The notes under the pieces are model-generated. The model had not been told where the DNA came from. It ran no database searches and worked only from the letters and a program-made list of their open reading frames with translations. A program made the position numbers and the translations under genes. Shown here piece by piece: positions 22,738 to 54,365 of a stretch of DNA of 64,000 nucleotides (within the stretch, counting starts at the first letter, position 1; every line of letters begins with the position of its first letter). The stretch lies in IMG/VR virus record IMGVR_UViG_3300031576_000002, positions 62,001-126,000 of that record. One strand, written 5' to 3'.

Positions 22738-23703
22738 TTACAGGACAAGCGTAACTTCACGAGGGGCTACAGTATCAGCCGTTGTTGCAGCAAACTCCAC
22801 GGCTGGATCAAAGCGCTCCCACGCCTTTCTGATTTTCCAGTAGCGCCTGAAGTATTCTATCCATTTCGGCCTGTTGTGGTTTGTAGCCATGTGGCACGCA
22901 ACGCACGAAGAGATAAGATTTCGGCTGAGGCCCTTACCCGTCTTACCGTAGTTATGATGCTTGTCGTAGTCCACATGGTGTACACTCAGTTTGACCTTAC
23001 AGCCCTTCTGGTGAATTCCGCAGATCTGGCAAGTGTACCAGTCCCGCTTTCTAATCCTTCGTCGAAGCCGTTTGCTGAATTCAGGAGGGTGTGGAAGAAA
23101 CGATGTTCCGCCTTTCCAGTTATAGTGGTTTGGACCTGAGAATCGTTCGATCATCTCAGGACGATTGAAGGTCTTTTTCAGACTGGCTGTGATCTTAGCC
23201 TGATGCTCTGGCGTCTTCTTTCTACCTTTGTTCCAACTCCCCCAGCCAGGTGGAGGCTTCCAAGGATTCGCAGCTCGCGCCGCTCGAATCTTCTGGCGTG
23301 TCTCTTCCGAGAGGTGGCGCCCTTTGAAGTAAGAAGTAGCCCTGCCACGAGTGTGCGCTAGCTTCTGCACTTCAATTTGGCTACGCCTTTTTATTCCGTG
23401 AATCTTCAGCCATCTGGATACAGGAGTAACGCTGCATCCGATTTCTTCGGCAATCTCTGCAACCGACATCTCTGCGTACTTTGCTTTCATCCAGCTCTTA
23501 TCTTTGAGGGTGGCGTAGGGAAGGCGTAGCTTTACAGTCGAAGGCATTCCCATCGGACGTACTGGAATTTTGGCCTTCCGCAAGCTTCTTAGAACTAGGG
23601 GCTTACTTACGCCGAGGCGGTCTGCCACTGCCTGCGCTGGCAGGCACTCCACCACATATAGTTGCTTCAAGGCTAGCGGGTCGAGATTGATGCGAGCCGG
23701 CAT
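22738..23703 (-). CDS. HNH homing endonuclease with HTH/NUMOD3-like repeats (intact)
   Basis: HLSEETRQKI, WNKG, NWKGG, RD.YTCQIC, VHHVDYDK..NL..C..CH. Confidence 0.9.
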   Translation of the reverse strand: MPARINLDPLALKQLYVVECLPAQAVADRLGVSKPLVLRSLRKAKIPVRPMGMPSTVKLRLPYATLKDKSWMKAKYAEMSVAEIAEEIGCSVTPVSRWLKIHGIKRRSQIEVQKLAHTRGRATSYFKGRHLSEETRQKIRAARAANPWKPPPGWGSWNKGRKKTPEHQAKITASLKKTFNRPEMIERFSGPNHYNWKGGTSFLPHPPEFSKRLRRRIRKRDWYTCQICGIHQKGCKVKLSVHHVDYDKHHNYGKTGKGLSRNLISSCVACHMATNHNRPKWIEYFRRYWKIRKAWERFDPAVEFAATTADTVAPREVTLVL

Positions 23704-23759: not shown

Positions 23760-24629
23760 CTATTCGAAGGAGGCGGCTGTTGCAGCAAATTCCACGGCAG
23801 GGTTGAAGTGTTCCCAGGCTGTCCTAATCTTCCAGTAACGCCTGAAGTATTTGACCCACTTTTTTCTATCCGTGTTGGTTCGGACGTGGCAAGGTATACA
23901 CAGTGTTGTAAGATTCTCGGGCACGTTATTATGCTTATCGTAATCTACACGGTGAACGCTCAGGCGTGCCTTACAGTCTTTCTGCTGCACACAACATATC
24001 TGGCATATCTGCCCATCCCGTGCCCGAATTTCTCGCCGTAACTCTGCGCTAAAAGTTCTCGGATATGGGTACTTTGCAATTCCGCCCTGCCAATTGTGAT
24101 TGAGCGGACCCGATATATCAGGACGAAATTTTCCCTTACCCTGTGCAACTCGACCTTGCTTAAAAGTTAAGCGGACAGCCTCGCTCCGGCTACGAAGGGG
24201 TATCCCAAATTTTTGAAATGACGCTACTACAACGCTCTGGGTACAGCCGAGCTTTGTAGCAATATCAGAAGTTGCTAAAGTCTTGTACTGCTCACGCAAC
24301 CACGCGGGATCTTGAAGCTCTGGGTACTGCGTTGGACCGTAGATTGTAGCTTTATGGAATTTGAGAACTCGCACGATAGTGGGACGGGTTACTCCAATCT
24401 TCTGTGCAACTTGTTCAGCAGAATGGCATTTCTCGTAAAGGTGTAGGATCCGATCGTGGTCCAGACTGTTCCAGATACTTGTAGGATGCCGCTCGATGCC
24501 CGAGCTAACCATAAACGTCCAGACTTTGTACTTCGAGACGCCCAAGTTTTTGGCGATCTGAAGGCACGTCATGCCCTGCTTTCGCAGGTGCTTGACGCGC
24601 TCTGGGTCGAGGTCTATACGCGCTGGCAT
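23760..24629 (-). CDS. HNH endonuclease paralog with catalytic His-to-Arg change
   Basis: Start reassigned to MPARID (matches paralog MPARIN); VHRVDYDK instead of VHHVDYDK. Confidence 0.85.
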   Translation of the reverse strand: MPARIDLDPERVKHLRKQGMTCLQIAKNLGVSKYKVWTFMVSSGIERHPTSIWNSLDHDRILHLYEKCHSAEQVAQKIGVTRPTIVRVLKFHKATIYGPTQYPELQDPAWLREQYKTLATSDIATKLGCTQSVVVASFQKFGIPLRSRSEAVRLTFKQGRVAQGKGKFRPDISGPLNHNWQGGIAKYPYPRTFSAELRREIRARDGQICQICCVQQKDCKARLSVHRVDYDKHNNVPENLTTLCIPCHVRTNTDRKKWVKYFRRYWKIRTAWEHFNPAVEFAATAASFE

Positions 24630-24661
24630 GCTACAGTTCGAGGCGGGCTCAGACTGTAGCA
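24630..24661 (-). promoter_or_regulatory. Hairpin/extended -10-like element (TGCTACAGT) before the HNH start
   Basis: GCTACAGT...ACTGTAGC inverted repeat abutting the ATG. Confidence 0.45.
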
Positions 24662-24686
24662 CACTCCAACTAGCCACGCCAGCAGC

Positions 24687-26318
24687 TTACTCGAACGAAG
24701 CCACAAATGCGAAATTCACGTCCAGGAAACGAAGCGGGAATGCAGGCTTGACTCTCGCCCGCACAAAGATCCTGCGCGGCTCGATCGTGTCCTGCTGCGC
24801 CTGCACGTCCCGGAACTCCGCCAGGATTCGATCCTGGACAAGAGTCTGAAGAATGGACGTGACCGAGGTCTCGATCGCACCTTCGGTGTCTGCCGTGATC
24901 TTGGTATTTCGGTAGAGATCGAACAGGCGCAGGCGCACGAACTGCCGGAGATAGTCCGCCGTGTCCTGAACGCTCAGGTCTTCCGTGAACACATTGGTCG
25001 TGTCCACGGTAATCGGAATCGCCATGATCGTGCCGAGGTTGGCGATATCGGCACGGCGCCGCTTGAAGGGAATGACGCCGTTTCGCCGAAGCTCTCGGGC
25101 CTCGTCGAGGATCCAGCTATCGTAAAGCGTGACGCCCGAAATGGGGGCGAAGTTGTTCGGCGCTCCGATGAACGATCCCGCCAGGAGTCCGCCGGTTGCA
25201 GCCATCAAGAAGTTCACGTTCTGATTGCTACCCAGCGTAGTCGCTGAAGCCGTCGAGCCCGAGATCGTACCTACCTGGATCGCTACCGCAGATCGCACGG
25301 TATGGCCGTCCAGATCGCCCGGAGGACCCTTCACGCCGGGAAGTGCGATTCGGTTTCCGGCGGTCTGGTTCTCATCGAACGGATTCGCCTGCTCCTTGAA
25401 CGACTCGGCAATCGCCGTCATCAAGGTAAGATCCGTACCTCTGGGGTAGCTGCCCAGCAGGGTACGCTCCCGGCCCTCGTCAGGGGCAGAAGCGGACAGG
25501 GCGTGGATGAAGAACCGGCTATTGTTGTCCTCGCCGAAAGTCCAGTCAGCTCTGTCCGGGTCACTGCCGGGATCCATGGGCACCAGCCAGAGCTTGAACT
25601 CCTCCACCTTGTTGATCTTCTGCACGGCAATGTCGTAGCTGGGCTCCATCTCTAGTGTCCCGCCTATGGGAGGAACAGTAGTAGGGTTAAGCGGATCCCC
25701 CCAGTCCAGTGCGGTCACGCCCGGCAAAGAACCATTGCCGGTAACGGAAGGATGGAAGTCGAGCTGGAGAATGACCACACCAGGCGCGTTGTTCTTGAAC
25801 GCCAACCGGCCCGCCGCCACCAGCGGATTGACCTCGCGGTCGTCAGCGAGAACCGAGGAGAAGAACAGCTCGCTGCCCCGCTCTCGAATCATCAACTGCT
25901 CGTCGAGATACAGCAGCGGCTCGAACGCGCTTGCGGGAATCTCCACGGTGTAGTTGAGGAAATACTTGGTTCCTACCGGGGGCTCTGCACCTCCCGGTGC
26001 CCATTCGACCCGTGCGGGAACGGTCGAGCTGGGAGAAGGCGTGATGGTGTAGTCCGTGCCCTCGGAGAACTGCGTCGCTCCCGGCGCTCTGCCGACACCC
26101 CAGACAGTCACGACAGGGCTGGTACTCGGCTCCGCGCGCAGATCGTCGTAAGAAGTCGTGGAGCTACGGGTCAGGCCGAGATTGCGTTCCTTGATGACCT
26201 CGTAGTCGCCCCGGCCAATAATGGCGGGAAAACGCTCGAAACCCGCGGGCGCGATGATGCCCTGGTTCTCGATCGTCACTACGATGCCAGGAAGACGTTC
26301 GCCAGTAGAGAGCGGCAT
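24687..26318 (-). CDS. Contractile tail sheath protein
   Basis: N-terminal LPGIVV; C-terminal LSVQDTADYLR..DTIEPRRIFV..PAFPLRFL sheath domain. Confidence 0.9.
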   Translation of the reverse strand: MPLSTGERLPGIVVTIENQGIIAPAGFERFPAIIGRGDYEVIKERNLGLTRSSTTSYDDLRAEPSTSPVVTVWGVGRAPGATQFSEGTDYTITPSPSSTVPARVEWAPGGAEPPVGTKYFLNYTVEIPASAFEPLLYLDEQLMIRERGSELFFSSVLADDREVNPLVAAGRLAFKNNAPGVVILQLDFHPSVTGNGSLPGVTALDWGDPLNPTTVPPIGGTLEMEPSYDIAVQKINKVEEFKLWLVPMDPGSDPDRADWTFGEDNNSRFFIHALSASAPDEGRERTLLGSYPRGTDLTLMTAIAESFKEQANPFDENQTAGNRIALPGVKGPPGDLDGHTVRSAVAIQVGTISGSTASATTLGSNQNVNFLMAATGGLLAGSFIGAPNNFAPISGVTLYDSWILDEARELRRNGVIPFKRRRADIANLGTIMAIPITVDTTNVFTEDLSVQDTADYLRQFVRLRLFDLYRNTKITADTEGAIETSVTSILQTLVQDRILAEFRDVQAQQDTIEPRRIFVRARVKPAFPLRFLDVNFAFVASFE

Positions 26319-27488: not shown

Positions 27489-27771
27489 GATTCGAGTACA
27501 CCTTTGCGCCGAGAAGATCGCTCAGCGCCGCGATTGGCTCTTCCGATTCTACGCGAAGCAGCAAAGCTTTGCGGTTCCGAAAGCACACTTTTTCTCCGGC
27601 CAGAAGCGCAGATGAAAAGGGATGCGGGACTCGCAACACGATCGGGCTAGTGGGAGTTTCGGTAGCAGGAGAGATTCGTACTTCGACCGTGCTGTCGGGA
27701 TCCCATCCTGCCGTTACTTCCGACACAACTCCTAAGAGTTCATCCGGGCAGGCAGAGTGCCAGGCGTACAT
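27481..27771 (-). CDS. Hypothetical protein
   Basis: Translationally coupled ORF. Confidence 0.45.
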   Translation of the reverse strand: MYAWHSACPDELLGVVSEVTAGWDPDSTVEVRISPATETPTSPIVLRVPHPFSSALLAGEKVCFRNRKALLLRVESEEPIAALSDLLGAKVYSNHV

Positions 27772-28265
27772 CAGAATGCCCAGCCTGCGGAAAATACAAC
27801 GGAGTTGATCCCGCCATTCGGTGCATCAAGGCCGGCATTCGATAGATGGTGGATTCGAGTTCCAAGCTCCAGTTCCTCGATTACACGCACGCTCGCGCCG
27901 GCTTGCAGCAGGAACATGACCTTGTCCGCCTGCCCACGCGCCCCATCGAAATCCGTATAGCCCGCGCCTGCATCTGCTCTTGCTGTAAAGCGGCTGTACT
28001 GGACACGACCTCCGCCGTACAGGAACGCGCCCCAGCCGTGGTACGGCGCATAGACACCCAAACCTTGAAGGCCGATCGCGCCCTTGAGGTACTCGAAAAG
28101 TACAGGAGTTCGACTCTCTACTTCGACCAGACCGAGGCGTGAATCAACCAGGTTCCCGTTTCGCGTACCGCCCAAGGGAACGCCGAATCCCCAGCCTGCT
28201 TCGATAGAAGGCTGCGCTTGCGCCGCAGTTGCAAGCAGCAGGAGGAAGGCCAGCGTTCGCATCAC
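27771..28265 (-). CDS. pagL: PagL-like lipid A 3-O-deacylase (outer-membrane beta-barrel)
   Basis: Signal peptide (..ATAAQA), amphipathic strands, HHLSNAGLDAPNGGINS catalytic motif, terminal Phe. Confidence 0.8.
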   Translation of the reverse strand: MMRTLAFLLLLATAAQAQPSIEAGWGFGVPLGGTRNGNLVDSRLGLVEVESRTPVLFEYLKGAIGLQGLGVYAPYHGWGAFLYGGGRVQYSRFTARADAGAGYTDFDGARGQADKVMFLLQAGASVRVIEELELGTRIHHLSNAGLDAPNGGINSVVFSAGWAF

Positions 28266-31376: not shown

Positions 31377-31985
31377 TTAGATTCTCAGGAAGTAACGGAA
31401 CTCTTCGCACATTCGCGGACTGCCAAACTCATAACCTTCGTAGTAAAAGTGTTCTCCATAGCAGTGGTAGGGCCATACAATCTTTAGGCGGTCCGAGTGG
31501 TACTCCACGGCGGCTTTGAGTTTTACCCCGTGCTCTAACTTCAGCCAATCTGCAAACTCGTATATGACCTCGTGAAAGACTTGAGTGTTTACAGGGAGTT
31601 CGTACTCCTGCGTGAACTTTTTGCCATCAAACACCATCAGCTTGCAAATACTGATGTCGCCGGCAACGGTCCGGCAGAGAGCGTCCAACCTGCGGCGCAA
31701 AAGGGCAAAGCTCGAAGCTGGCTCTGCGTAGGGCTCTTCTTTAGAAGGTCGCGACGTAGGGCGCTCTGGTCGCGGAAGCGTTCGGAATCCTGACTTTGCC
31801 AGGATTCGATACGCTTCGTTGATCGCCTTCATCCGTTCCTCGGCCATGTCCCGGAACTGCTTGGGCGCACGGTCAGGGTGATAGGCGAGACTCAGAAAGC
31901 GATAGACCTTCTTGATGTCCGCTTTGTCCGCGGACATGGAAACACCTAGCACCTGACAAGCTTCTTGGGGCGTGGAAAGCGGCAT
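31377..31985 (-). CDS. J-domain (DnaJ-like) protein
   Basis: VLGVS..IKKVYR..YHPDR..AEERMKAINEAYRIL. Confidence 0.9.
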   Translation of the reverse strand: MPLSTPQEACQVLGVSMSADKADIKKVYRFLSLAYHPDRAPKQFRDMAEERMKAINEAYRILAKSGFRTLPRPERPTSRPSKEEPYAEPASSFALLRRRLDALCRTVAGDISICKLMVFDGKKFTQEYELPVNTQVFHEVIYEFADWLKLEHGVKLKAAVEYHSDRLKIVWPYHCYGEHFYYEGYEFGSPRMCEEFRYFLRI

Positions 31986-32803: not shown

Positions 32804-33160
32804 TCACGCGAATGTAAGATACTCCGGTGAAGCAAAGATGTTTCGCCGTTTCAAGGGCTCCGGAGATTCTGCTTCGCACCAGCGTTTCGTCCACGGCAGT
32901 GAATCAATGTCGGGGAACAGATAGAAAGGGGCTCTCATACCTCCGACCGCAGAGGTCCATGCAGGGGGCTTCTGCCCCTTCCGAAGGGCGAGTAGCTCGA
33001 TGATGGCGGCAGCTAGGGCTAGTTCTTCTGAACTTCCCAGGCAGGGTCTTTCTACCTCCCCGAGGTTATCGACAGAGCGCAGAAGCTCCATCGTCCACGC
33101 ACGCACGTAAAAATCGTTCTGTGCGTGCGCAGCAACTGCAATCTTTTCAAGTAGGCTCAT
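32804..33160 (-). CDS. Probable antitoxin-like partner of the nucleotidyltransferase
   Basis: ALAAAIIELLA..PPAW..PFY..ESPEPLKRRNIF, a pattern I associate with DUF6036 neighbours. Confidence 0.55.
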   Translation of the reverse strand: MSLLEKIAVAAHAQNDFYVRAWTMELLRSVDNLGEVERPCLGSSEELALAAAIIELLALRKGQKPPAWTSAVGGMRAPFYLFPDIDSLPWTKRWCEAESPEPLKRRNIFASPEYLTFA

Positions 33161-33734
33161 GAAGCCTTCCCCACAAATCGTCAAAGGCATACTGCATTTT
33201 AAGCTCTCGGCCTTTTTGAAGAAAGGGCTGCAAACTTTCCCAGACACTCTCTTTGCTCGCATCTTCTGCCAAAGCCTTGAGCAGTTCCGTAGCGTCTCCG
33301 TAGTCACCCGCTCCACGCCAAGCCCCCAGCTTCAGAGCTAGCAACTGTTCTGTAGAGGGCTGAGAAGCTGTGATCCCTTCTGATTGTACCAGAACAGGAC
33401 CCTCGGATAGAACATCGACATAGCCCTTGGCCGCATCATTGAGCCAGTCACGGGGCCAGTTGTTCTCTGCGGCTACCGCCTCTGCCCATTTCCGCACGAG
33501 CTGTGCATTGGGCGATAGAATGACGACGTCAACATCTTTGGTGGACTCTCGGGTGCGGTAGCCAAGAACCATAGCAGCGCCACCAAGAACGACCAAATGG
33601 ATCTGTTGACCATCGGCATGGGCAAGTTCGCCGAGTCGGGTAAGGCCGGATTGAATATCGGAAAAGTTGAAGGAGGAGTCTGCGGGAGACGCGGAAAGGC
33701 AGAGGCGACGGAGGATAGCTGTGAGGGGGCTCAT
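33147..33734 (-). CDS. DUF6036/AbiEii-like nucleotidyltransferase
   Basis: LVVLGGAAM..RESTKDVD..WLND..LLALKLGA.R..DYGD. Confidence 0.8.
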   Translation of the reverse strand: MSPLTAILRRLCLSASPADSSFNFSDIQSGLTRLGELAHADGQQIHLVVLGGAAMVLGYRTRESTKDVDVVILSPNAQLVRKWAEAVAAENNWPRDWLNDAAKGYVDVLSEGPVLVQSEGITASQPSTEQLLALKLGAWRGAGDYGDATELLKALAEDASKESVWESLQPFLQKGRELKMQYAFDDLWGRLHEPT

Positions 33735-34936
33735 GCTGCGGCCTGGACGAGACGGGGTATGCCGAGGAAGGTGCGGAGGCGCTTGCGGACTAGCTTGCGG
33801 CCTTCCTTGGACTTCAGTTCGCACTCCCACACAATGAGCAATTTCCATCCTGCATCAGCTAGAGCTTCTGCCTTTGCTTTATCACGTAGTACGGCGGCGA
33901 TCTGCGGAACGTACTTAGGAGTGTACGGCTGATGCCATTCATTACCAACAGCGTGTGCATGCCAAAAGCATCCATTGCACTCTATCGCTACTTTAGTTTG
34001 TAAGAGCGCGATGTCGAGGGCTCGCTTCTTACCACGCTGGTAGCGATGGTCAAAAGTGTAATCAGTTTGAAACTCTACCCCCAGTTTGCGCAAAATTCTC
34101 TGGACACGGCGTTCAGGTAGCGAATCCTTGACTGGCTGGCAACGGCGTAACGGAATACCGAACTTCTTCACTCGGTCGGCTATGGTACTCGTGGTGCAAT
34201 GAAAGCATCGAGCAATTTCCGGAATTGTCAGCTTTTGAGCTGTATAGAGCCCTTCTAGCGACTCTTTTGTAATATCGGGCCTTCGCTCACGATCCGGCCA
34301 GTTACCAGCTTCGATTGTTCTTTTAGCCCAAATCTTCGTCGCCGTTACTGTATCGCGCCTTTTTACCCCACTTCTTTCCAGGCGGTCAATAATAGTAGTT
34401 GTATCAACTTTAAGTTCTGCTGCAAGACTCGAAGCGCTCCTGCCGTCCTTGTATTGAACGACTATGTACGCATCATCAAGCTCTTTAGCCGCAAAACTCT
34501 TCCTAACGCTTACCCCTTGTGCAGACATGTAACTGCGTACGGTAAGACCGTCAAGCCCGGTACGGTTAGCTATCTCTCTGATACTATGCCCTGCCTTGTA
34601 GAGAGACACTATTTCAGAAGACTTTTCTGCGTACTTCCTCCATTCGTACTTGTAGACTCCCGCAAGAGTCAAACGATTTATTACGATTTTCTCTGTTGTT
34701 TCTACTTCGCGTGCAATCGCTCGCGGACCTTTTCCCGTCTGGTAGAGCTGTAAGATACGTTCAGCATCGACCTCAACTCTTCCAGGGCACTTTTCGATGA
34801 TAACCCCCGCTTCGCGCAGTCTGGACTTGACGAGCTTTCTGGAAACTCCTAAAGAAGCCGCCAAAGCGCTTAGGCTTTCCCGCGCCTTGTAGCGTGCAAC
34901 TAGCACGGCCGAGTTGAGATGGATTTGGCGTTTCAT
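33731..34936 (-). CDS. Free-standing Vsr/DUF559-type endonuclease with multiple HTH repeats
   Basis: Five LY..G.S..IA repeats; LDIA..VAIECNGCFWHAH..RD..GWKLLIVWECE; TATAAAAT upstream. Confidence 0.85.
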   Translation of the reverse strand: MKRQIHLNSAVLVARYKARESLSALAASLGVSRKLVKSRLREAGVIIEKCPGRVEVDAERILQLYQTGKGPRAIAREVETTEKIVINRLTLAGVYKYEWRKYAEKSSEIVSLYKAGHSIREIANRTGLDGLTVRSYMSAQGVSVRKSFAAKELDDAYIVVQYKDGRSASSLAAELKVDTTTIIDRLERSGVKRRDTVTATKIWAKRTIEAGNWPDRERRPDITKESLEGLYTAQKLTIPEIARCFHCTTSTIADRVKKFGIPLRRCQPVKDSLPERRVQRILRKLGVEFQTDYTFDHRYQRGKKRALDIALLQTKVAIECNGCFWHAHAVGNEWHQPYTPKYVPQIAAVLRDKAKAEALADAGWKLLIVWECELKSKEGRKLVRKRLRTFLGIPRLVQAAA

Positions 34937-34970
34937 GCAGCGGGCAATTTTATAGCAACTGCGTAGAACA

Positions 34971-36812
34971 TCAAGGCGTAAATCCGCTTCCTGCAAGTAC
35001 CCCGCTAGGCCCGCCGACCGACAAGCCGTACCTACTGAAAAACCCCGACGGAACACTACTATTACAGCACATGATCCCGTCCGCTACAAAGTTCTCGAAC
35101 CTGCTCCCAGGCACAGAAATATCGTACATACGTGGGCTCTTCATAGGCTCGATAGATACGATCTTAGCGCGACAGACTTCGGTATCCAAGAGATGCCCTT
35201 GCGCCCTTGGAGGAGCTACGACAATCTCATCTCCCACTTGAAGGTCTCGACCTTTTACCCGTAGAAGGCTGTTCAAGCCGAACCGAAATACCGAGTGGTC
35301 TCCCGTGAGAGAAATCGATGTCCTGCTTGACAGACGCACCCGATAGCAGTCCTTTCCCGCGCAATCATGAGAGAGCCACGCCTGGACTTTTTTCCAGGCA
35401 GGACGCCCCGTCTTTGTATCGACCGCAAGCACTTCGGGAGATTTGACTTCAGCGGCAAAATCGCCAATTGGAACTGTCTGGATCTTTCCGCCGTCCCTCA
35501 CAATCAACTCGTGTTCCGCGCCAACAGAAAAGAAGCGGCCAATCGAGTTGTGAGCCATGACGCCCGAAGCCACGAAGTTCTCTACTCCAGGCACGGACAG
35601 GTCGTACATCTTAGCTACGTGAACAGGTTCTACTGCCTTGACACGGTCAATCCGTGAAGTGCTGGTTTCCAGACGGTGCCGAAGATCGCAAGTGACAATC
35701 TCACTACCTTCTTTCAGGGCTCTTCCTTGTACCGGCTCCAGCCGGTTTCCCTGCACCTCAAACAAGGAGTGATCCCCTGTAATCGTAATGGACTTTCCAC
35801 CGGCTGTCTTGATCTTGTAGCAGTCTTTGGCAGAAGTGTCGTGCTCCCACCACTGGGTAACCGGATGCCATCCTACCTCACCGCTAGCGGGATGGATCGC
35901 CAAGACTTCAGAGCCTTCTCGTGGGTTCGCACAAGCCTCTCCAATCGTAACCGGATAGGTTCGTTTACCCTCCCGTATAAGTAATTCTTCTTCAGTAGAT
36001 ATACTGAAGGAATACTGCATCTGGACTAACACCGATCCTTGACTTCTAAACTGCTGCTTGAACCGGATCAGCCAGTCTTTGAAGTCCGCGAACAGGGGAA
36101 GTCCGCTCACCTGAGCAATCTTGCTCAGGTGGTCAATGGTGAGCGCGTTGCCGCCGAGGCTGTAGACGTAGTCCGTGTCCACGGCGTAGATGCCCTGGCT
36201 CTCCAGGGCTACCAGGGTAGCGGCCTGGATGAGAACCCAGAGATGCTGGTCTGGGAAGTTGCCGACCCCGAACCCGGTATAGGGCGGCACCATGTTGATG
36301 ACGCCCGCTCCGAGGTCGAGGTAGACGGACATCATCGCGTCGGAGTAGCCGTAGGTGACGCCTCCCCGCGACGTAATGTTGGTGGACGTGAGGCTCTTGC
36401 GGCTCTTGTCCACCATCAGCCGCAGGATGGGGATGTACTTGAAGTATTTGATCGGGGCTACGCGGATCAGGTGCTGCTTCCGGATCTCCCTGGCGTTTCC
36501 AGTCCGGAAGCGGTAGAAGGCCAGGTACGTGGGGCTCTGAAGCAATGCTGAGTCAAAACCGTACTTGTACGTGCCCAATCCAAGCCGCTGGACAGCACCA
36601 CTGCCTGCCTCTGGAAACAGCAGCGTCTCGATCGCGGTCCCGCCGTCGTCCACTAGCTCGATCTTTCCCGCTTCGGGGTCGGTCGTGATGAGCTGCTCGG
36701 GAGTCGCGTTCCTGTCGAGTGGCTCGGTCGCCGCAATGAGAATGTCCTCGGCAGTGCCTTGCCTGAGCAGGACAAGCTCTTGATCGCTTCTGAGAGGCTG
36801 TGGCTGGCTCAT
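34971..36812 (-). CDS. Putative head-tail/neck protein interrupted by two mini-inteins
   Basis: Two Hint domains; predicted spliced product of about 304 aa; host-protein function inferred from context only. Confidence 0.6.
   Translation of the reverse strand: MSQPQPLRSDQELVLLRQGTAEDILIAATEPLDRNATPEQLITTDPEAGKIELVDDGGTAIETLLFPEAGSGAVQRLGLGTYKYGFDSALLQSPTYLAFYRFRTGNAREIRKQHLIRVAPIKYFKYIPILRLMVDKSRKSLTSTNITSRGGVTYGYSDAMMSVYLDLGAGVINMVPPYTGFGVGNFPDQHLWVLIQAATLVALESQGIYAVDTDYVYSLGGNALTIDHLSKIAQVSGLPLFADFKDWLIRFKQQFRSQGSVLVQMQYSFSISTEEELLIREGKRTYPVTIGEACANPREGSEVLAIHPASGEVGWHPVTQWWEHDTSAKDCYKIKTAGGKSITITGDHSLFEVQGNRLEPVQGRALKEGSEIVTCDLRHRLETSTSRIDRVKAVEPVHVAKMYDLSVPGVENFVASGVMAHNSIGRFFSVGAEHELIVRDGGKIQTVPIGDFAAEVKSPEVLAVDTKTGRPAWKKVQAWLSHDCAGKDCYRVRLSSRTSISLTGDHSVFRFGLNSLLRVKGRDLQVGDEIVVAPPRAQGHLLDTEVCRAKIVSIEPMKSPRMYDISVPGSRFENFVADGIMCCNSSVPSGFFSRYGLSVGGPSGVLAGSGFTP
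35061..35528 (-). mobile_element. Mini-intein 2 (156 aa, ends CCN)
   Basis: SVGAEHEL..LTGDHSVF..MYDISV..ENFVADGIMCCN|S. Confidence 0.85.
35547..36005 (-). mobile_element. Mini-intein 1 (153 aa)
   Basis: SISTEEEL..ITGDHSLF..MYDLSVPGVENFVASGVMAHN|S. Confidence 0.9.
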
Positions 36813-37834
36813 AGCGGGGCTTCCGGTGCGGGCTGATAGCCCTTGTGGAGAGGCTTCAGCTCATCGTAGAGAGCGTTCAAGAAATTCCACCGCGGATTTT
36901 CCCCGAGAGCCTCATCTTGAGCCTCTTGTTCCAACTTATACCAGTCTGCTTCTGCACGCTGAAACTCTTCATCACTCTCGAAGTCTTCTTCGCGGGGCAT
37001 GGAGGGTAGGCCGTAGTTAGCGTCGTAGGAGTGCCATTCTTCCCAGAACTTGTCCTGCTCTGCGTCGCGTATGACTGCGAGTTCCGCTACGGTACCACTC
37101 GCTTCAGCAAGCTCTACAAAGGCTTCCGCAACGTCTTGAACGTCGCGCGCCCGGTGGTACTTTCCGACAAGCTCTAACGCCCTACCTACGAGATGCTCCC
37201 AAACGTGACCACTTAGGTCGGGCATTACCCCATAGTCGGAGGAACCCCATTCTCTGCCTACGACTTGGTCAAAACTCCAGTCGTCAGCTTCTCCAAGCTT
37301 GGGGTGGTCAAGTGCCTGGAACCATTCCTTGAGGAGCGCCTTGTAAGGCTTCGAGGGCTCTGAGTTTGACTTTCCCTTGATCTGCGCAATGCGCGGGTTT
37401 TTGGTAGAATGTGGCGTGCTCATTTCAATCGTGACATGTGGTTGATTCTGTGGGTCGCGTAACGAATAAATGTATGAATCCTCTGCATACACCGCTTGAC
37501 AGTAGGACCCGATGCAATGTTTCATCTTGGCGCCCTCGACTTCCAGATCATTCTTGGACTTGACCTGTTGAATCGTCCATCCACTGTCCAGGCTGTAGAC
37601 GACATTCTTTTCTTCGTACTCTTCCGGCTCTTGTGTTCCTATCTCCCGGTCCCACTCACGGACCGCGTCTAGTACCTGTTCCGAGGTCATGGGCATGATG
37701 TTAGGACGTTTCTCTCTAAACCAGTCGCCAATGTGGTCAATTACTTCGGCGTCTATAGGAGGAAGATCTCGCTCCTGGATGTAGTCGTTGAACGTGGTCC
37801 ACAGCCTTTCCCGTTGTAGTTCCCGAACACCCAA
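36809..37834 (-). CDS. PcfJ-like domain protein (possibly the frameshifted C-terminus of the upstream gene)
   Basis: LEVEGAKMKHCIGSY..IYSLRD..PHVTIE..QIKGKSN. Confidence 0.75.
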   Translation of the reverse strand: MGVRELQRERLWTTFNDYIQERDLPPIDAEVIDHIGDWFREKRPNIMPMTSEQVLDAVREWDREIGTQEPEEYEEKNVVYSLDSGWTIQQVKSKNDLEVEGAKMKHCIGSYCQAVYAEDSYIYSLRDPQNQPHVTIEMSTPHSTKNPRIAQIKGKSNSEPSKPYKALLKEWFQALDHPKLGEADDWSFDQVVGREWGSSDYGVMPDLSGHVWEHLVGRALELVGKYHRARDVQDVAEAFVELAEASGTVAELAVIRDAEQDKFWEEWHSYDANYGLPSMPREEDFESDEEFQRAEADWYKLEQEAQDEALGENPRWNFLNALYDELKPLHKGYQPAPEAPL

Positions 37835-40422: not shown

Positions 40423-40908
40423 CTACTCCGGCAAGATACCGATTCCACGTCGAACGGTTTGCACCACCGACTTCTCAGGATCTACGTCAAACGCCTTGAA
40501 CAGAATATCTGTGGCTTTCTCGACATCGAACTCCTTACAGGAAAAGAAATCGGCTGATAGATAAGAACGCTGCGGCCAGGTATGAACGGAGAGATGAGAT
40601 TCCGCGATTATGACAATTCCGGAAACTCCCGACTCCCCCCACGCACGTTCTTCGAGATGCCGTTCCATATCTCGAACTACAGTTTCTGCGTGAGACGGTA
40701 ACGGAGCAACTCCACCACGGAGCTGCTCTACAAAACGCTGAAGCTCGCTCGCTGCATGCGGGAAACGTACGCAAAGCGGTGGCACTACGACACACATATC
40801 TAGGTGCGCCGGCATCTCTGCAAGTACGTGATAAACGGTCTCTAAACTCGCTAGAGCCCCGGGGCTCCTAACCCGGCAATCAAAAAGTAGGTGCAACCCA
40901 GTCTGCAT
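40423..40908 (-). CDS. speD: S-adenosylmethionine decarboxylase proenzyme
   Basis: [31 protein letters not shown]; GGAGG SD before the ATG at 40908. Confidence 0.9.
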
Positions 40909-40910
40909 GG

Positions 40911-41516
40911 CTACGCTGCCTCCAGTTTTTCCAGTAACAGCGCTTCTACTTGGTGAGGGCACATGCCGGGATTTTCTAAGTTGAAGGCTTTTCCCGCATT
41001 ACAGTTGTAGCACAAAGTTTGGTACTTAGTCGGATCATTCTCTACTATCATACGCTGCCACATTTTCCGCAAGCCGCAGAGCTTCCGGTCTCTATTTCCG
41101 CCGCCTTTAATACGGTCAATTACTAAAAACTGTAAGCGAGCTTCTCCGCAGCAAGTACACGCATAGCCGTAAAGGTCAAAAAGCCTAAAGCGTAGGCGCA
41201 TCCTCGAATTGTAAAACTTCCTTCTTATCTTGTCTGGATGCTTTTTCTGATAGCGTCGCTCTCGCTCTTTACGTCTTGGATCAACTTTGTGAGATTTATA
41301 GTAGTCGGCATTCCGCTGCTTTATGTATTCTCGCCTCTTTGCGTTCCGCAAACGGTCGGCCTCCCTCAAAGATTCTATATGCTCAAGTCGCCACTTTCTG
41401 TTTTTAGCCAGTAATGTAGCCTTATTTTTCTGGTAGAAGGCTCGCTTCTTCTCCAAAATTTCTTGCCGGTTAGTCTGATAATACTCCTGCCTTTTCTTTA
41501 GTTCTAGGCTAGACAC
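40911..41516 (-). CDS. HNH endonuclease paralog with catalytic His-to-Arg change
   Basis: [26 protein letters not shown]. Confidence 0.8.
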
Positions 41517-41519
41517 AAT

Positions 41520-42140
41520 TTAGGCCGCCTTGTCCAACTCCATAGTCCGCCTTTCTACCTCGTGCGGACAAATACCAGGATACTCAAAATTATTCACTTT
41601 TCCAGCGTTACAGTTCCAGCACAGTGTCTGGTACTTGGCCGGATCTTTCTCAACAATCATACGTTTCCACATGCTCCGGCTGTTTCCGGAATTTTTCAAA
41701 TCTCGGTTTCCTCCGCCATTTATATGGTCTATCGCGAGAAATGGAAGACGGTGTTCACCGCAACAGGCACAGCATAGACCGTAAATTGTTAAAACTCTGT
41801 AGCGAACTGCGGCCCACTGCTTGCGACCTCTCGCATTCAACTCTTCCCGTCTACGTTTATAGGCTTGGTGTAGCCGCTCTTTATACTGTGGATCATTTTT
41901 ATGAGCCTGGCGCCACGCTGTACTCTGCGCATTATGCTTTTCTTTATTAGCTTTGTAGTAAGCGCGCTGGTACGCGCGCGAGCGCTCACTGTTAGCAGCC
42001 CGCCACTTTCTATTACGCGCTACAACTTTTTCCTTATTCAAGGCGTAGCGCGCCCGGATCTTATCAATGTTCTTCCAGTAATACCTCCGACCTCTCGCCC
42101 GCTCTTTTACTAAGTCAACTTCCTTGCGATCAACAGCCAT
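41520..42140 (-). CDS. HNH endonuclease (intact)
   Basis: CACCGE..FLAIDHINGGG..YQTLCWNCN. Confidence 0.85.
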   Translation of the reverse strand: MAVDRKEVDLVKERARGRRYYWKNIDKIRARYALNKEKVVARNRKWRAANSERSRAYQRAYYKANKEKHNAQSTAWRQAHKNDPQYKERLHQAYKRRREELNARGRKQWAAVRYRVLTIYGLCCACCGEHRLPFLAIDHINGGGNRDLKNSGNSRSMWKRMIVEKDPAKYQTLCWNCNAGKVNNFEYPGICPHEVERRTMELDKAA

Positions 42141-53115: not shown

Positions 53116-54297
53116 TTAGGTCGTCTTGAGACCCTTCGACACGCCGGCCTTGGTAATGATGAGTTCGTCGATCAGCTCCCACCAGAACCAGCCCCGCACC
53201 GGCTTGCCGGCCTGGAACTGATTCGTCGGCTCGCTGAACAACTCGACCCACACCGGGAAGCCGCCGAGGTACTCAGGAGCGGTCACGCAGAAGATTTCAC
53301 CAGGACGGATGACCTCGAAGTCGTTCGGACGGCGACCGGCCGAAACGATCACGGGGACGCTGAGGATCATCCCGATGAAGCCTGCCATGACCAGCTCGCG
53401 CTGCGTCACGTTGTCCACTTCCTGGCTCATCACCGTCACGAAGTCGGAAATCTCGCGGCGGTTGACCAGAAACTTGTCGGCCACGAGCCGATTCTTCTCC
53501 ACCTGGTAGCGAATCGCTTCCATGGTGGCGAGGTTGGCGGTGGCAAAGAACACGAGGTCGTTCACCGCAGTTGCTGCGGCGTCGAGCCGGCTACGCAGGA
53601 TGCTGTCCTCCTGCTTCTCGATCGCCTGCCGAGCACGATCCTGGATGCGGCTCAGGATGTCGTAGCCCGCCTGGTACACGTCAGCCAGGTTGATGGTCGG
53701 GTACGCGGACACCACACGCGGGACCGGGAACACGTACCGGCCACCCAGACGGGTTTCCGGGGTCTGTGCGTCCACGCCCACATCGAACGCCGTCGCGAAA
53801 ACGTCCTTGTCGTACCGGACGGTTTCGCCCTGCCTCACCAATCTCACGGGCAGGATCCGACGGCTGAACCCGTCGTAGTCGAGCGTCTCCTTGACGGGAT
53901 TGACGAGCTGCTGGCCAAGAATTTCGAACGCCTCTCCGCGGGGATTCGCCAGCGCCTCGCGGATCATTCCTTCCTCTTCCGCAGCCGTGACGTTGATGCC
54001 TGCGCTTGCGGTGCGATCCCAGGTCGGGACAGCATCGACCTCGCCCTCCGCCATGCTGTCGATCACATGCTTGATCTGGAACAGGACGTCGCGCTGGTCG
54101 TAGGCGTTGATCTCACCCTGACGGTCGAAGACCATCTCCCGCGAACGCTGCTTGGTACCAGCGCGGGTCAGACCGCCGAAAGCGGGAAGGTTGGCGGGCT
54201 CGCCAGTGCGGCGATCCCGGTAGGTCAGACCGGCAGGCGCGAGCGGCTTCTTGCCCCCCGTGGCTGCGGCGCCCAGTTGAAGATACGGGTTAGACAT
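53116..54297 (-). CDS. Major capsid protein (HK97-like)
   Basis: About 393 aa; AAGGAG SD; NPVKETLDYDGFSRRIL..YDKD..ARQAIEKQED motifs; strong codon bias; follows protease, scaffold and decoration genes. Confidence 0.85.
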   Translation of the reverse strand: MSNPYLQLGAAATGGKKPLAPAGLTYRDRRTGEPANLPAFGGLTRAGTKQRSREMVFDRQGEINAYDQRDVLFQIKHVIDSMAEGEVDAVPTWDRTASAGINVTAAEEEGMIREALANPRGEAFEILGQQLVNPVKETLDYDGFSRRILPVRLVRQGETVRYDKDVFATAFDVGVDAQTPETRLGGRYVFPVPRVVSAYPTINLADVYQAGYDILSRIQDRARQAIEKQEDSILRSRLDAAATAVNDLVFFATANLATMEAIRYQVEKNRLVADKFLVNRREISDFVTVMSQEVDNVTQRELVMAGFIGMILSVPVIVSAGRRPNDFEVIRPGEIFCVTAPEYLGGFPVWVELFSEPTNQFQAGKPVRGWFWWELIDELIITKAGVSKGLKTT

Positions 54298-54365
54298 TTT
54301 CATCTCCTTTTGGAAGGGGCGGAGGAATTTCCTCCTCCACTCCGGATTTCAGTTCGTCTTTGTCA

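What the first reader, a model, noticed from the sequence alone, without database searches (positions are those of the whole stretch)
35061..36005. Two paralogous mini-inteins separated by a 6-residue extein in a structural protein
Seen: QYSF|intein 1 (153 aa, S..HN)|SIGRFF|intein 2 (156 aa, S..CCN)|SSVPSG. Both are Ser1 inteins at F/S junctions, are clearly related (EVLA..W..V..W.HD..KDCY..TGDHS.F) and lack an endonuclease domain; intein 2 has Cys instead of the penultimate His. Known: phage inteins mostly sit in terminase or replication proteins. Inference: local intein duplication, and splicing could gate virion assembly (ordered or redox-sensitive).
Basis: partly seen in the sequence, partly recalled or inferred. 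Interest (0 to 1): 0.65.

Follow-up and report, generated by a model that had tools for sequence, protein, structure and literature searches.

The report
Two tandem mini-inteins in phage neck protein
A 205-kb phage from a cave metagenome has two small, related self-splicing protein inserts (inteins) only six residues apart in the tail end of its probable head-to-tail adaptor protein, next to a free-standing homing endonuclease gene. The inteins themselves are ordinary, but their spacing and setting are unusual.

Summary
The ORF at window 34971..36812 (-), 613 aa, reads N-extein 1-269 (..QYSF), intein 1 (153 aa, Ser1..His-Asn), SIGRFF, intein 2 (156 aa, Ser1..Cys-Asn), then C-extein (29 aa, SSVPSGFF..). 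Both inserts pass Pfam's intein cut-off. Six intein-free homologs (289-310 aa) read ..QYS(F/Y)S(I/L)GRFFS(S/E)VPSGFF.. straight across both junctions.

The two inteins are 41% identical (118 bits; next best 70 bits). They are sisters (94/94) inside a clade of Ser1 inteins. They are unrelated to the two other inteins of this phage and to the LAGLIDADG inteins that about 7% of family representatives carry at a third site.

The host protein is probably the portal adaptor. Relatives hit the PHROG family 'head-tail connector'. A confident model has an Ig-like domain plus a four-helix bundle that matches T4 gp13 and other phage neck proteins. The gene lies between the capsid and sheath genes. The inteins sit in the conserved C-terminal arm, which in T4 gp13 docks into the portal, so splicing is most likely required for neck attachment.

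Third-codon-position GC content (GC3) falls from 0.80 to about 0.5 exactly at intein 1. It stays low through intein 2, the C-extein and an adjacent Vsr-like homing endonuclease gene. This suggests one mobile block. Redox or ordered gating has no support.

The parts
34971..36812 (-). Whole precursor gene: 613 codons plus stop. The predicted spliced product is 304 aa (269+6+29).
   Evidence: ORF list and translation. The start overlaps the stop of the upstream gene. Homologs begin with the same MSQP.P.
36006..36812 (-). N-extein, residues 1-269: an Ig-like N-terminal domain plus the helical bundle of a gp13-like head-to-tail adaptor. It ends QMQYSF.
   Evidence: 50-57% identity to the intein-free homologs P0003-P0006. 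Model and fold matches. GC3 0.80, like the capsid gene (0.82) and sheath gene (0.74).
35547..36005 (-). Intein 1, residues 270-422 (153 aa). It is a class-1 mini-intein with Ser1, TGDH (block B) and terminal His-Asn, followed by Ser+1.
   Evidence: PF14890 at 53.1 bits alone. Absent from all homologs at exactly this point. GC3 0.52.
35529..35546 (-). Six-residue inter-intein extein SIGRFF, residues 423-428. It contains the family's conserved Arg.
   Evidence: It aligns with SIGRFF / SLGRFF / SIGRFM of the intein-free homologs. The DNA is 15/18 identical to homolog L001.
35061..35528 (-). Intein 2, residues 429-584 (156 aa). It is a class-1 mini-intein with Ser1, TGDH and terminal Cys-Asn (no penultimate His), followed by Ser+1.
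   Evidence: PF14890 at 37.3 bits alone. 41% identical to intein 1. Absent from homologs. GC3 0.55.
34974..35060 (-). C-extein, residues 585-613 (SSVPSGFFSRYGL..). This is the end of the conserved C-terminal arm.
   Evidence: It aligns with the homologs' C-termini; P and G are nearly invariant in 74 family members. GC3 is only 16/29, P=0.002 against the N-extein's rate, as expected for a co-converted flank.
33731..34936 (-). Free-standing homing endonuclease gene. It encodes about 6 helix-turn-helix repeats plus a C-terminal Vsr-like nuclease (401 aa from ATG 34936). The open frame reaches back to GTG 35056, inside the C-extein.
   Evidence: Pfam HTH families and Vsr (25.7 bits, just under the cut-off of 27). 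PHROG 'endonuclease' 2.9e-15 and 'homing endonuclease' 1.3e-11. E. coli Vsr 1cw0 at E 1.8e-7, with the catalytic Asp and the Phe-Trp-His motif aligned. GC3 0.49. It is the only copy of this nuclease type in the genome.

Best explanation
The gene encodes the phage's head-to-tail adaptor, a functional analogue of T4 gp13 and probably a distant relative. It is interrupted by two canonical class-1 mini-inteins that lack an endonuclease domain.

How it most likely works. Each intein uses Ser1 (N-O acyl shift), Ser+1 (transesterification) and its terminal Asn (cyclisation). Each should fold and splice independently. Removing both joins QYSF-SIGRFF-SSVPSGFF into a 304-aa adaptor with the family's conserved C-terminal arm.

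[quoted passage not shown] A 17-kDa HINT (intein splicing) domain left in the arm would block this. So both splicing events are most likely obligatory maturation steps before the neck can attach to the DNA-filled head.

Origin. The inteins are sister paralogs. One most likely arose from the other by transposition to a look-alike F|S site 18 bp away.

Mobility. Lacking their own endonuclease, they most likely move (or once moved) together with the 3' end of the gene and the adjacent free-standing Vsr-like homing endonuclease gene. In this model that enzyme cuts intein-less alleles near this conserved site, and the inteins disrupt the site in the carrier genome.

Shown: intein identity, exact junctions, absence from homologs, sister relation within the sample, composition break, and the Vsr-like endonuclease with its catalytic motif.

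Inferred: actual splicing, adaptor function and portal docking of the arm, duplication rather than double invasion, and endonuclease-driven mobility.
For: Inteins:
- PF14890 at E 3.9e-25 with two stretches; each intein is over the cut-off alone.
- Ser1, TGDH, terminal Asn and Ser+1 are present in both.
- Six intein-free homologs close both junctions exactly.

Relatedness:
- 41% identity, 118 bits.
- The best other inteins found in 5.8 billion protein clusters (proteins of 337-1073 aa) score at most 70 bits, and they are also Ser1 inteins.
- The ML tree puts the two as sisters at 94/94, away from this phage's RecA-like and portal inteins and from the family's site-a inteins.

Host protein:
- 280 relatives at E<=1e-3.
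- 18 of 74 members hit phrog_17327 'head-tail connector protein'.
- The AF2 model of homolog P0003 has pLDDT 83.6.
- Its residues 130-265 match T4 gp13 in 9lu4_D (Z 8.7, 110 residues), the phage 812 neck 8q01_b (Z 8.3, 126 residues), Pa223 9nwi_A, cyanophage A4 9k09_d and KHP30 7wmp_m.
- The gene lies between the major head protein and the tail sheath.
- Synteny with homolog contigs.
- The gp13 C-terminal arm inserts between portal clip helices (PMC12929587).

Mobile block:
- GC3 is 0.80 in the N-extein, 0.52 and 0.55 in the inteins, 16/29 in the C-extein (P=0.002) and 0.49 in the endonuclease gene.
- The endonuclease gene starts 35 nt after the stop codon.
- Homolog contigs have no endonuclease gene at this place.
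- Vsr-like homing endonucleases are already known beside or inside phage inteins (PMC2677866; bioRxiv 10.1101/2025.01.02.630785).
Against: - No splicing data exist. Intein 2 lacks the penultimate His that normally assists Asn cyclisation, so it could be slow or dead, although every other catalytic position is intact.
- The adaptor assignment rests on middling structural scores (Z 8.3-8.7 for a helical domain; the tool warns that Z below about 13 can be a common arrangement). It also rests on PHROG hits of relatives, not of this protein or its nearest homolog.
- The C-terminal arm is modelled at only pLDDT 48-84.
- The window holds at least four free-standing endonuclease genes, so one lying next to this gene has roughly a 1-in-15 chance of being coincidence.
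- No relative with the same inteins, or with only one of them, was found, so neither duplication nor current mobility is demonstrated.
Confidence: 0.8

Rival explanations
1. There were two independent invasions. Related Ser1 mini-inteins (or their endonuclease-bearing ancestors) from a shared phage intein pool entered sites b and c separately. They are sisters here only because the pool is unsampled.
For: Identity is only 41% with long branches of 0.59 and 0.87. The tree has only 22 sequences, and the word-based search reaches only proteins of 337-1073 aa. The closest extein relative (57% identity) has neither intein, so the order of events cannot be read.
Against: No closer relative of either intein was found among 5.8 billion protein clusters. 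Both sit at similar F|S sites 18 bp apart and have the same GC3. An intein occupying one site would destroy a homing site that spans the other (principle studied in PMC10643990).
Confidence: 0.25
2. Intein 2, or both inteins, no longer splices. The gene is then a decaying copy, or it yields an adaptor with a permanently inserted HINT domain.
For: Intein 2 has Cys rather than the penultimate His. Serine nucleophiles are intrinsically weaker than cysteine. No expression or proteome data exist (one search found no RNA run).
Against: The frame is open over 613 codons, with Ser1, TGDH, the block F Asp, the terminal Asn and Ser+1 all intact in both inteins. No second adaptor gene turned up: BLAST of the homolog contigs' ORFs against the genome's ORFs matched only this gene. 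The inteins interrupt a motif with nearly invariant residues. Nine of ten site-a inteins of the same family also lack the penultimate His, yet sit in full-length genes. Splicing without that His has been shown experimentally for other inteins (my own knowledge: Chen, Benner and Perler, J Biol Chem 2000).
Confidence: 0.1
3. Splicing is a regulatory gate, conditional on redox state or on order, that times neck attachment.
For: The position is in a probable docking arm. There is an unusual Cys-Cys-Asn end and several Cys residues in intein 2. Conditional inteins exist in other systems (reviewed in PMC7765530, listed; I did not read it).
Against: None of the four nucleophiles is a Cys, so the documented disulfide traps cannot form at the active sites. 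The compositional and endonuclease evidence points to selfish mobile DNA. Nothing in the sequence indicates a sensor.
Confidence: 0.07

Closest known systems
Pyrococcus abyssi CDC21 (MCM) with two mini-inteins, and T. kodakarensis DNA polymerase with PI-TkoI and PI-TkoII (as cited in PMC8966425)
   Same: Two inteins are present at once in one host protein. In CDC21 both are mini-inteins without an endonuclease.
   Different: Those pairs are 48 and 85 residues apart, in archaeal replication proteins. Here the gap is 6 residues, the host is a phage virion protein, both inteins use Ser1, and they are sister paralogs.
Anaeramoeba Prp8 inteins at sites b and d (PMC10710043)
   Same: Inteins at two different sites of the same protein branch together. 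This is read as spread of an intein within one gene.
   Different: That case is a eukaryotic nuclear gene with Cys1 inteins at well-separated sites already known from other organisms. Here the sites are new, 18 bp apart, and in a phage.
DnaB intein sites a and c, two residues apart (PMC4760082), and haloarchaeal MCM-a/-d neighbouring inteins (PMC10643990)
   Same: Intein insertion sites cluster within a few residues inside a conserved functional motif. Neighbouring inteins are expected to interfere with each other's homing sites.
   Different: The passage on DnaB a/c that I read describes the two sites and does not say whether one protein carries both inteins. The MCM inteins studied include full-size inteins with their own endonuclease.
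Actinobacteriophage inteins in structural proteins and with Vsr-like endonucleases (bioRxiv 10.1101/2025.01.02.630785)
   Same: Phage inteins occur in portal, minor capsid and tape measure proteins. Vsr-like homing endonucleases are associated with inteins. That paper proposes that free-standing endonucleases join inteins.
   Different: No adaptor or neck protein is among its 19 host proteins. There the Vsr-like ORF lies inside the intein in another frame. Here it is a separate gene downstream of the host gene.
'Fractured genes': split inteins with an intervening free-standing Vsr-like or GIY-YIG endonuclease gene (PMC2677866)
   Same: The same endonuclease family (Vsr-like, with an N-terminal DNA-binding part) sits as a free-standing gene beside endonuclease-less intein sequences in phage DNA.
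   Different: There the endonuclease gene splits the intein and the host gene in two. Here both inteins are contiguous and the endonuclease gene follows the stop codon. No upstream hairpin was found (z 0.66).
Bacteriophage T4 gp13 neck/adaptor protein (PDB 9lu4; PMC12929587)
   Same: About 300 aa, with a four-helix bundle core and a C-terminal arm after the last helix. It attaches to the portal after packaging.
   Different: No detectable sequence similarity. This family has an N-terminal Ig-like domain instead of gp13's inserted swing domain, and a longer arm (about 45 aa) with its own conserved motif. T4 gp13 has no inteins.

Membership tests
Class-1 intein (HINT splicing domain) | Significant match to the intein splicing-domain profile | tested here: met
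   PF14890 at 88.9 bits against a cut-off of 35.8, in two stretches. Singly: 53.1 and 37.3 bits.
Class-1 intein (HINT splicing domain) | Nucleophile (Cys/Ser/Thr) at intein position 1 and at extein position +1 | tested here: met
   Ser270 and Ser423 for intein 1; Ser429 and Ser585 for intein 2.
Class-1 intein (HINT splicing domain) | Block B Thr-x-x-His | tested here: met
   TGDH in both inteins, aligned to each other.
Class-1 intein (HINT splicing domain) | Block G: penultimate His and terminal Asn | tested here: inconclusive
   Intein 1 ends His-Asn. Intein 2 ends Cys-Asn: the Asn is present and the His is absent. The His is not universal: nine of ten site-a inteins of the same host family also lack it.
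Class-1 intein (HINT splicing domain) | In-frame insertion at a conserved site, absent from homologs, with exteins contiguous in them | tested here: met
   Alignment A1 with six intein-free homologs.
Class-1 intein (HINT splicing domain) | Protein splicing actually occurs | not testable with these tools
   No proteome or RNA data are available; the only runs are DNA contigs of the source sample.
Mini-intein (no homing endonuclease domain) | Size of about 130-200 aa with no endonuclease domain between blocks B and F | tested here: met
   153 and 156 aa. No LAGLIDADG, HNH, GIY-YIG or Vsr hit inside the protein. The two align end to end without a large insert.
Phage head-to-tail adaptor (T4 gp13-like neck protein; phrog_17327 head-tail connector) | Profile match to a named connector family | tested here: inconclusive
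   18 of 74 aligned relatives hit phrog_17327 (best E 3.4e-13). P0001 and its nearest homolog P0003 do not. No Pfam family hits.
Phage head-to-tail adaptor (T4 gp13-like neck protein; phrog_17327 head-tail connector) | Helical-bundle adaptor fold | tested here: inconclusive
   Five independent neck or adaptor chains match residues 130-265 at Z 8.3-8.7, rmsd 2.5-3.8 A, with 94-126 residues aligned. This is below the level the tool regards as safe for helical domains.
Phage head-to-tail adaptor (T4 gp13-like neck protein; phrog_17327 head-tail connector) | Gene in the head-neck-tail morphogenesis module | tested here: met
   Major head protein at 53116..54303, this gene, then tail sheath at 24687..26318 and baseplate wedge at 11507..12985, all on the - strand. 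The same capsid block lies upstream in homolog contigs.
Phage head-to-tail adaptor (T4 gp13-like neck protein; phrog_17327 head-tail connector) | C-terminal arm binds the portal clip | not tested
   No complex was predicted. The portal itself carries an intein, and the spliced arm has no stored reference.
Vsr-like free-standing homing endonuclease (Dassa et al. 2009) | Vsr-type nuclease core with the catalytic Asp and the Phe-Trp-His motif | tested here: met
   E. coli Vsr 1cw0 at E 1.8e-7. The alignment shows the Asp, CFWH and the later Arg-Asp aligned. Pfam Vsr scores 25.7 bits, just under its cut-off of 27.
Vsr-like free-standing homing endonuclease (Dassa et al. 2009) | Separate DNA-binding module and its own reading frame beside a mobile or conserved target | tested here: met
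   There are multiple HTH repeats over residues 40-300. The gene is separate and starts 35 nt after the host gene's stop.
Vsr-like free-standing homing endonuclease (Dassa et al. 2009) | Cleaves the endonuclease-less or intein-less allele | not testable with these tools
   This needs a cleavage assay.

The most novel reading that the evidence does not exclude
The two endonuclease-less inteins, the co-converted last 29 codons of the adaptor gene and the downstream Vsr-like endonuclease gene are one composite homing cassette. The free-standing enzyme cuts the conserved arm-coding DNA of naive phages, and the inteins make the carrier immune by splitting that target twice. This would be an intein counterpart of intron plus free-standing-endonuclease 'collaborative homing'. 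It would also be a living intermediate of the 'splicing first, endonuclease later' model of intein evolution. The second intein would have arisen by mis-targeted repair 18 bp from the first.
Probability: 0.3. Interest if true: 0.75.

Novelty: new member of a known kind. Interest (0 to 1): 0.55.

Why it matters
1. I found no report of inteins in this host family, a widespread phage adaptor/neck protein. The library searches 'intein' with 'head-tail connector' or 'neck protein' gave nothing relevant. The family turns out to have three insertion sites, and about 7% of its representatives carry an intein at the third site.

2. A 6-residue spacing with both sites occupied is far closer than the pairs cited in the paper I consulted (48 and 85 residues, PMC8966425). 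It poses a concrete question: can two HINT domains whose active sites share a hexapeptide fold and splice independently, and in what order?

3. Two small (153 and 156 aa), natural, diverged Ser1/Ser+1 mini-inteins that must work side by side are attractive candidates for orthogonal, cysteine-free protein ligation tools.

4. The locus offers a testable case of endonuclease-less inteins mobilised in trans by a free-standing endonuclease.

None of this changes what inteins are; it extends where and how they occur.

Tried and rejected
- **First structure model.** With only six sequences it was useless (pLDDT 47.5). It was replaced by a 74-sequence alignment.
- **Structure searches.** Foldseek against the PDB returned only immunoglobulin domains for the N-terminal domain. 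The viral and Atlas libraries gave only unnamed phage proteins.
- **Sequence searches of the extein.** PDB sequence searches found nothing. Pfam and PHROGs do not hit the extein itself.
- **Relatives carrying the inteins.** IMG/VR gave 18 loci, all about 38% identical and intein-free over the matched part. The JGI metagenome scan returned only the source contig. Among the 150 best of 280 family representatives, only P0001 has inserts at sites b or c.
- **Population variants.** Only contigs of the source sample were available. They are identical to the window and show no joints, so no intein-less allele could be seen or excluded.
- **Regulatory hairpin upstream of the endonuclease gene** (as in Dassa et al.): not supported (z 0.66).
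- **Redox control:** rejected as an active-site mechanism because all nucleophiles are Ser.
- **Gene fractured by the endonuclease gene:** rejected. The C-extein ends where the homologs end.
- **Complex prediction (adaptor arm with portal):** not run. The portal carries an intein, the C-extein alone is 29 aa, and the spliced arm has no stored reference.
- **The joined (spliced) protein:** not built, typed or searched. The exteins were searched by reference (P0001:1-278), and natural intein-free homologs stood in for the spliced form.
Full report
**Setting**

The window is bases 62001-126000 of a 205,227-bp IMG/VR virus record, estimated 85% complete. The same contig is Ga0247727_10000083, from a cave metagenome. 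Nearly all genes lie on the - strand.

PHROG scans identify these genes:
- a major head protein at 53116..54303 (E 2e-47);
- a tail sheath at 24687..26318 and a baseplate wedge subunit at 11507..12985;
- several free-standing HNH endonuclease genes.

So this is a large contractile-tailed phage rich in selfish DNA.

**The observation**

The ORF at 34971..36812 (-) encodes 613 aa. Its parts are:

| Part | Residues | Window coordinates | Notes |
|---|---|---|---|
| N-extein | 1-269 | 36006..36812 | ends QMQYSF |
| Intein 1 | 270-422 | 35547..36005 | 153 aa, Ser1 .. His-Asn |
| Spacer | 423-428 | 35529..35546 | SIGRFF |
| Intein 2 | 429-584 | 35061..35528 | 156 aa, Ser1 .. Cys-Cys-Asn |
| C-extein | 585-613 | 34974..35060 | SSVPSGFF.. 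|

The finding's coordinates, lengths and end residues are all correct.

Pfam's Intein_splicing model hits at E 3.9e-25 with two stretches, and no endonuclease family hits inside the protein. In a six-frame search of the genome, each intein alone passes the curated cut-off: 53.1 and 37.3 bits against 35.8.

A word search with the N-extein by reference found six intein-free homologs of 289-310 aa. In the alignment the gaps open exactly at the two predicted junctions. P0003 reads QMQYSF-SIGRFF-SEVPSGFF and P0004 reads QMQYSY-SLGRFF-SSVPSGFF. The predicted spliced product is 304 aa, which is the family's length.

I did not build or search the joined sequence. The exteins were handled by reference, and natural intein-free homologs stood in for the spliced form.

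An independent Logan assembly of the same sample is identical over 33700..37000.

**Are the inteins paralogs?**

They align end to end at 41% identity (118 bits, E 2e-39), sharing Ser1, TGDH in block B, the MYD(L/I)SVPG..ENFVA block and the terminal Asn.

A search of 5.8 billion protein clusters with the intein region (proteins of 337-1073 aa) found nothing closer than 25-40% identity over parts of it. On the splicing cores these score at most 70 bits to intein 1 and 54 bits to intein 2. These distant relatives are LAGLIDADG-bearing inteins of FlaI-type ATPases, UDP-glucuronate decarboxylases and a RecA-like protein. They also start with Ser.

I built a maximum-likelihood tree of 22 splicing cores (first 105 plus last 45 residues of the long inteins). 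It places the two inteins as sisters with 94/94 support inside this Ser1 clade. They are far from three other groups:
- this phage's own RecA/UvsX-like intein (Cys1, 283 aa);
- this phage's portal intein (Cys1, LAGLIDADG, 393 aa);
- the inteins found at another site of the same host family.

Caveats:
- The tree is small and its branches are long.
- The four decarboxylase inteins were cut one residue short by a slip in my script.
- The word search cannot see very different lengths.

Within what can be sampled, duplication into a second F|S site 18 bp away is the simplest reading. Spread of an intein within one gene has a precedent in Anaeramoeba Prp8 (PMC10710043). Two separate invasions by related inteins remain possible.

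**The host protein**

A profile of the six homologs found 280 relatives at E<=1e-3 among 1.84 billion representatives. None has a Pfam family. However, 18 of 74 aligned members hit phrog_17327, 'head-tail connector protein' (best E 3.4e-13).

With this 74-sequence alignment, AlphaFold2 gave a confident model of the nearest homolog (pLDDT 83.6, pTM 0.78). It has:
- an Ig-like sandwich (residues 9-129);
- a four-helix bundle with a beta-hairpin (130-264);
- a less confident C-terminal stretch with a short helix at 278-286, which is where both inteins are inserted.

An all-against-all structural search matched the bundle to five neck or adaptor structures:

| Structure | Chain | Z | Residues aligned |
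|---|---|---|---|
| T4 gp13 | 9lu4_D | 8.7 | 110 |
| Pseudomonas phage Pa223 | 9nwi_A | 8.7 | 94 |
| Cyanophage A4 portal-tail complex | 9k09_d | 8.6 | 98 |
| Phage KHP30 tail | 7wmp_m | 8.4 | 101 |
| Phage 812 neck | 8q01_b | 8.3 | 126 |

These Z values are middling for a helical domain. But the non-immunoglobulin matches I picked out for this domain are all phage neck, tail or portal-tail complexes. They agree with the PHROG label and with the gene's position between the capsid and sheath genes. I therefore take the protein to be the portal adaptor, with moderate confidence.

In T4, gp13's C-terminal arm after the last bundle helix inserts between the clip helices of adjacent portal subunits, and this is the first docking step (PMC12929587). 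In this family the equivalent stretch carries the conserved motif ..GR(F)F.xxP.GxF(S)R.. The Pro and Gly are conserved in at least 90% of the 74 members. The two inteins flank the conserved Arg. A retained HINT domain there should prevent docking, so splicing is most likely a required maturation step. That is inference by analogy, not a result.

**A family prone to inteins**

Ten of the 150 best family representatives carry a 415-437-aa Cys1 LAGLIDADG intein at a third site, DTDxx(F/Y)|S(D)QGN, in the hairpin between helices 3 and 4. An eleventh carries a 203-aa intein at the corresponding place. Nine of the ten large ones lack the penultimate His (C, F, Q, Y or N before the Asn). This makes the Cys-Asn end of intein 2 unremarkable. 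Only the window's protein has inserts at sites b and c.

**The neighbour and the composition break**

Thirty-five nucleotides after the stop codon an ATG opens a 401-codon gene (33731..34936; the frame is open back to a GTG inside the C-extein). It encodes about six helix-turn-helix repeats and a C-terminal Vsr-like nuclease. The evidence is:
- Pfam Vsr at 25.7 bits, just under the cut-off of 27;
- PHROG 'endonuclease' at 2.9e-15 and 'homing endonuclease' at 1.3e-11;
- E. coli Vsr at E 1.8e-7, with the catalytic Asp and the Phe-Trp-His motif aligned.

This is the family that Dassa et al. described as free-standing homing endonucleases beside split inteins in phage DNA (PMC2677866). Gosselin et al. 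found it out of frame inside actinophage inteins. Its nuclease type occurs only once in this genome. Homolog contigs have ordinary small genes at that position.

Third-position GC along the adaptor gene and its neighbour:

| Region | GC3 |
|---|---|
| N-extein | 0.80 (capsid gene 0.82, sheath gene 0.74) |
| Intein 1 | 0.52 (0.30 in its first 30 codons) |
| Intein 2 | 0.55 |
| C-extein | 16 of 29 codons (P=0.002 against the N-extein's rate) |
| Endonuclease gene | 0.49 |

The C-extein also uses AGT/AGG codons where the nearest homolog DNA uses TCG/CGG. The whole stretch from site b to the endonuclease gene therefore looks like imported DNA, including a co-converted gene end.

I infer a composite mobile unit in which the free-standing enzyme supplies the mobility that the mini-inteins lack. 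The caution is that at least four free-standing endonuclease genes lie in these 64 kb, so adjacency alone is only weakly significant. No hairpin precedes the gene.

**What is not supported**

Ordered or redox-gated splicing is not supported. All four nucleophiles are serines, so the known Cys-based disulfide traps cannot act at the active sites. The compositional evidence also argues for a selfish origin. No relative with one or both inteins was found in IMG/VR, the JGI metagenomes or the representative library, so neither the order of events nor present-day mobility can be shown.

**Comparison with what is known**

Inteins in phage structural proteins are known for portal, minor capsid and tape measure proteins. 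This phage's own portal-like gene also has one. Library searches gave no report of inteins in a neck or adaptor protein.

The pairs of inteins in one protein cited in the paper I consulted are 48 and 85 residues apart (PMC8966425). DnaB sites a and c are two residues apart as sites (PMC4760082). Neighbouring MCM inteins interfere with each other's homing (PMC10643990). A doubly occupied 6-residue spacing of sister mini-inteins is, as far as I could check, unusual.

**Verdict**

This is a real and cleanly delimited feature. The inteins are canonical in mechanism, so they are new members of a known kind. Three things are unusual:
- the host family is new for inteins;
- the two inteins lie exceptionally close together in tandem;
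- the free-standing endonuclease gene beside them suggests how they move.

Noticed in passing
G000:C1 49808..51688 (-), outside the window (locus L005 661..2541): A RecA/UvsX-like recombinase of 626 aa is interrupted in its P-loop (GPES|C...VVHN|SGKS) by a 283-aa Cys1 intein. An HNH-like motif is visible in the intein.
   Followed up: partly
G000:C1 21112..24423 (-), outside the window (locus L007 490..3801): A 1103-aa portal-like protein carries a 393-aa Cys1 intein with a LAGLIDADG-type domain (..SDRLL|CHPAGT...SSHN|SASREW..). The phage therefore has at least four inteins, two of them in the two proteins expected to touch each other (portal and adaptor).
   Followed up: partly
Proteins P0044, P0056, P0064, P0078, P0079, P0089, P0098, P0100, P0107, P0151 (relatives from other metagenomes): The adaptor family has a recurrent third intein site in the DTDxxF|S(D)QGN hairpin. 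About 7% of the 150 best representatives hold a 415-437-aa LAGLIDADG intein there, mostly without the penultimate His.
   Followed up: partly
window 22738..23703 and 23760..24677 (-): Two tandem HTH+HNH homing endonuclease genes lie directly downstream of the tail sheath gene. A further HNH gene is at 41520..42140.
   Followed up: no
window 33147..33848 (-) and 32804..33316 (-): A DUF6036/DUF2204 nucleotidyltransferase and an overlapping 170-aa ORF lie just downstream of the Vsr-like endonuclease gene. Both have low GC3 (0.52 and 0.59). They could be a small accessory or defence pair in the same imported block.
   Followed up: no
window 27771..28265 (-): A phage-encoded protein has a PagL lipid A 3-O-deacylase domain (Pfam E 1.7e-13). 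This hints at a Gram-negative host and at modification of the host's outer membrane.
   Followed up: no
window 31377..31985 (-), 40423..40962 (-) and 36809..37834 (-): A DnaJ-domain protein, an S-adenosylmethionine decarboxylase (also present next to the adaptor gene in homolog contig L002) and a PcfJ-like protein immediately upstream of the adaptor gene.
   Followed up: no
P0024, P0134, P0148 and others (relatives): Many family members carry one to three extra copies of the N-terminal Ig-like domain in front of the helical core. This fits a surface-exposed decoration on the neck.
   Followed up: no
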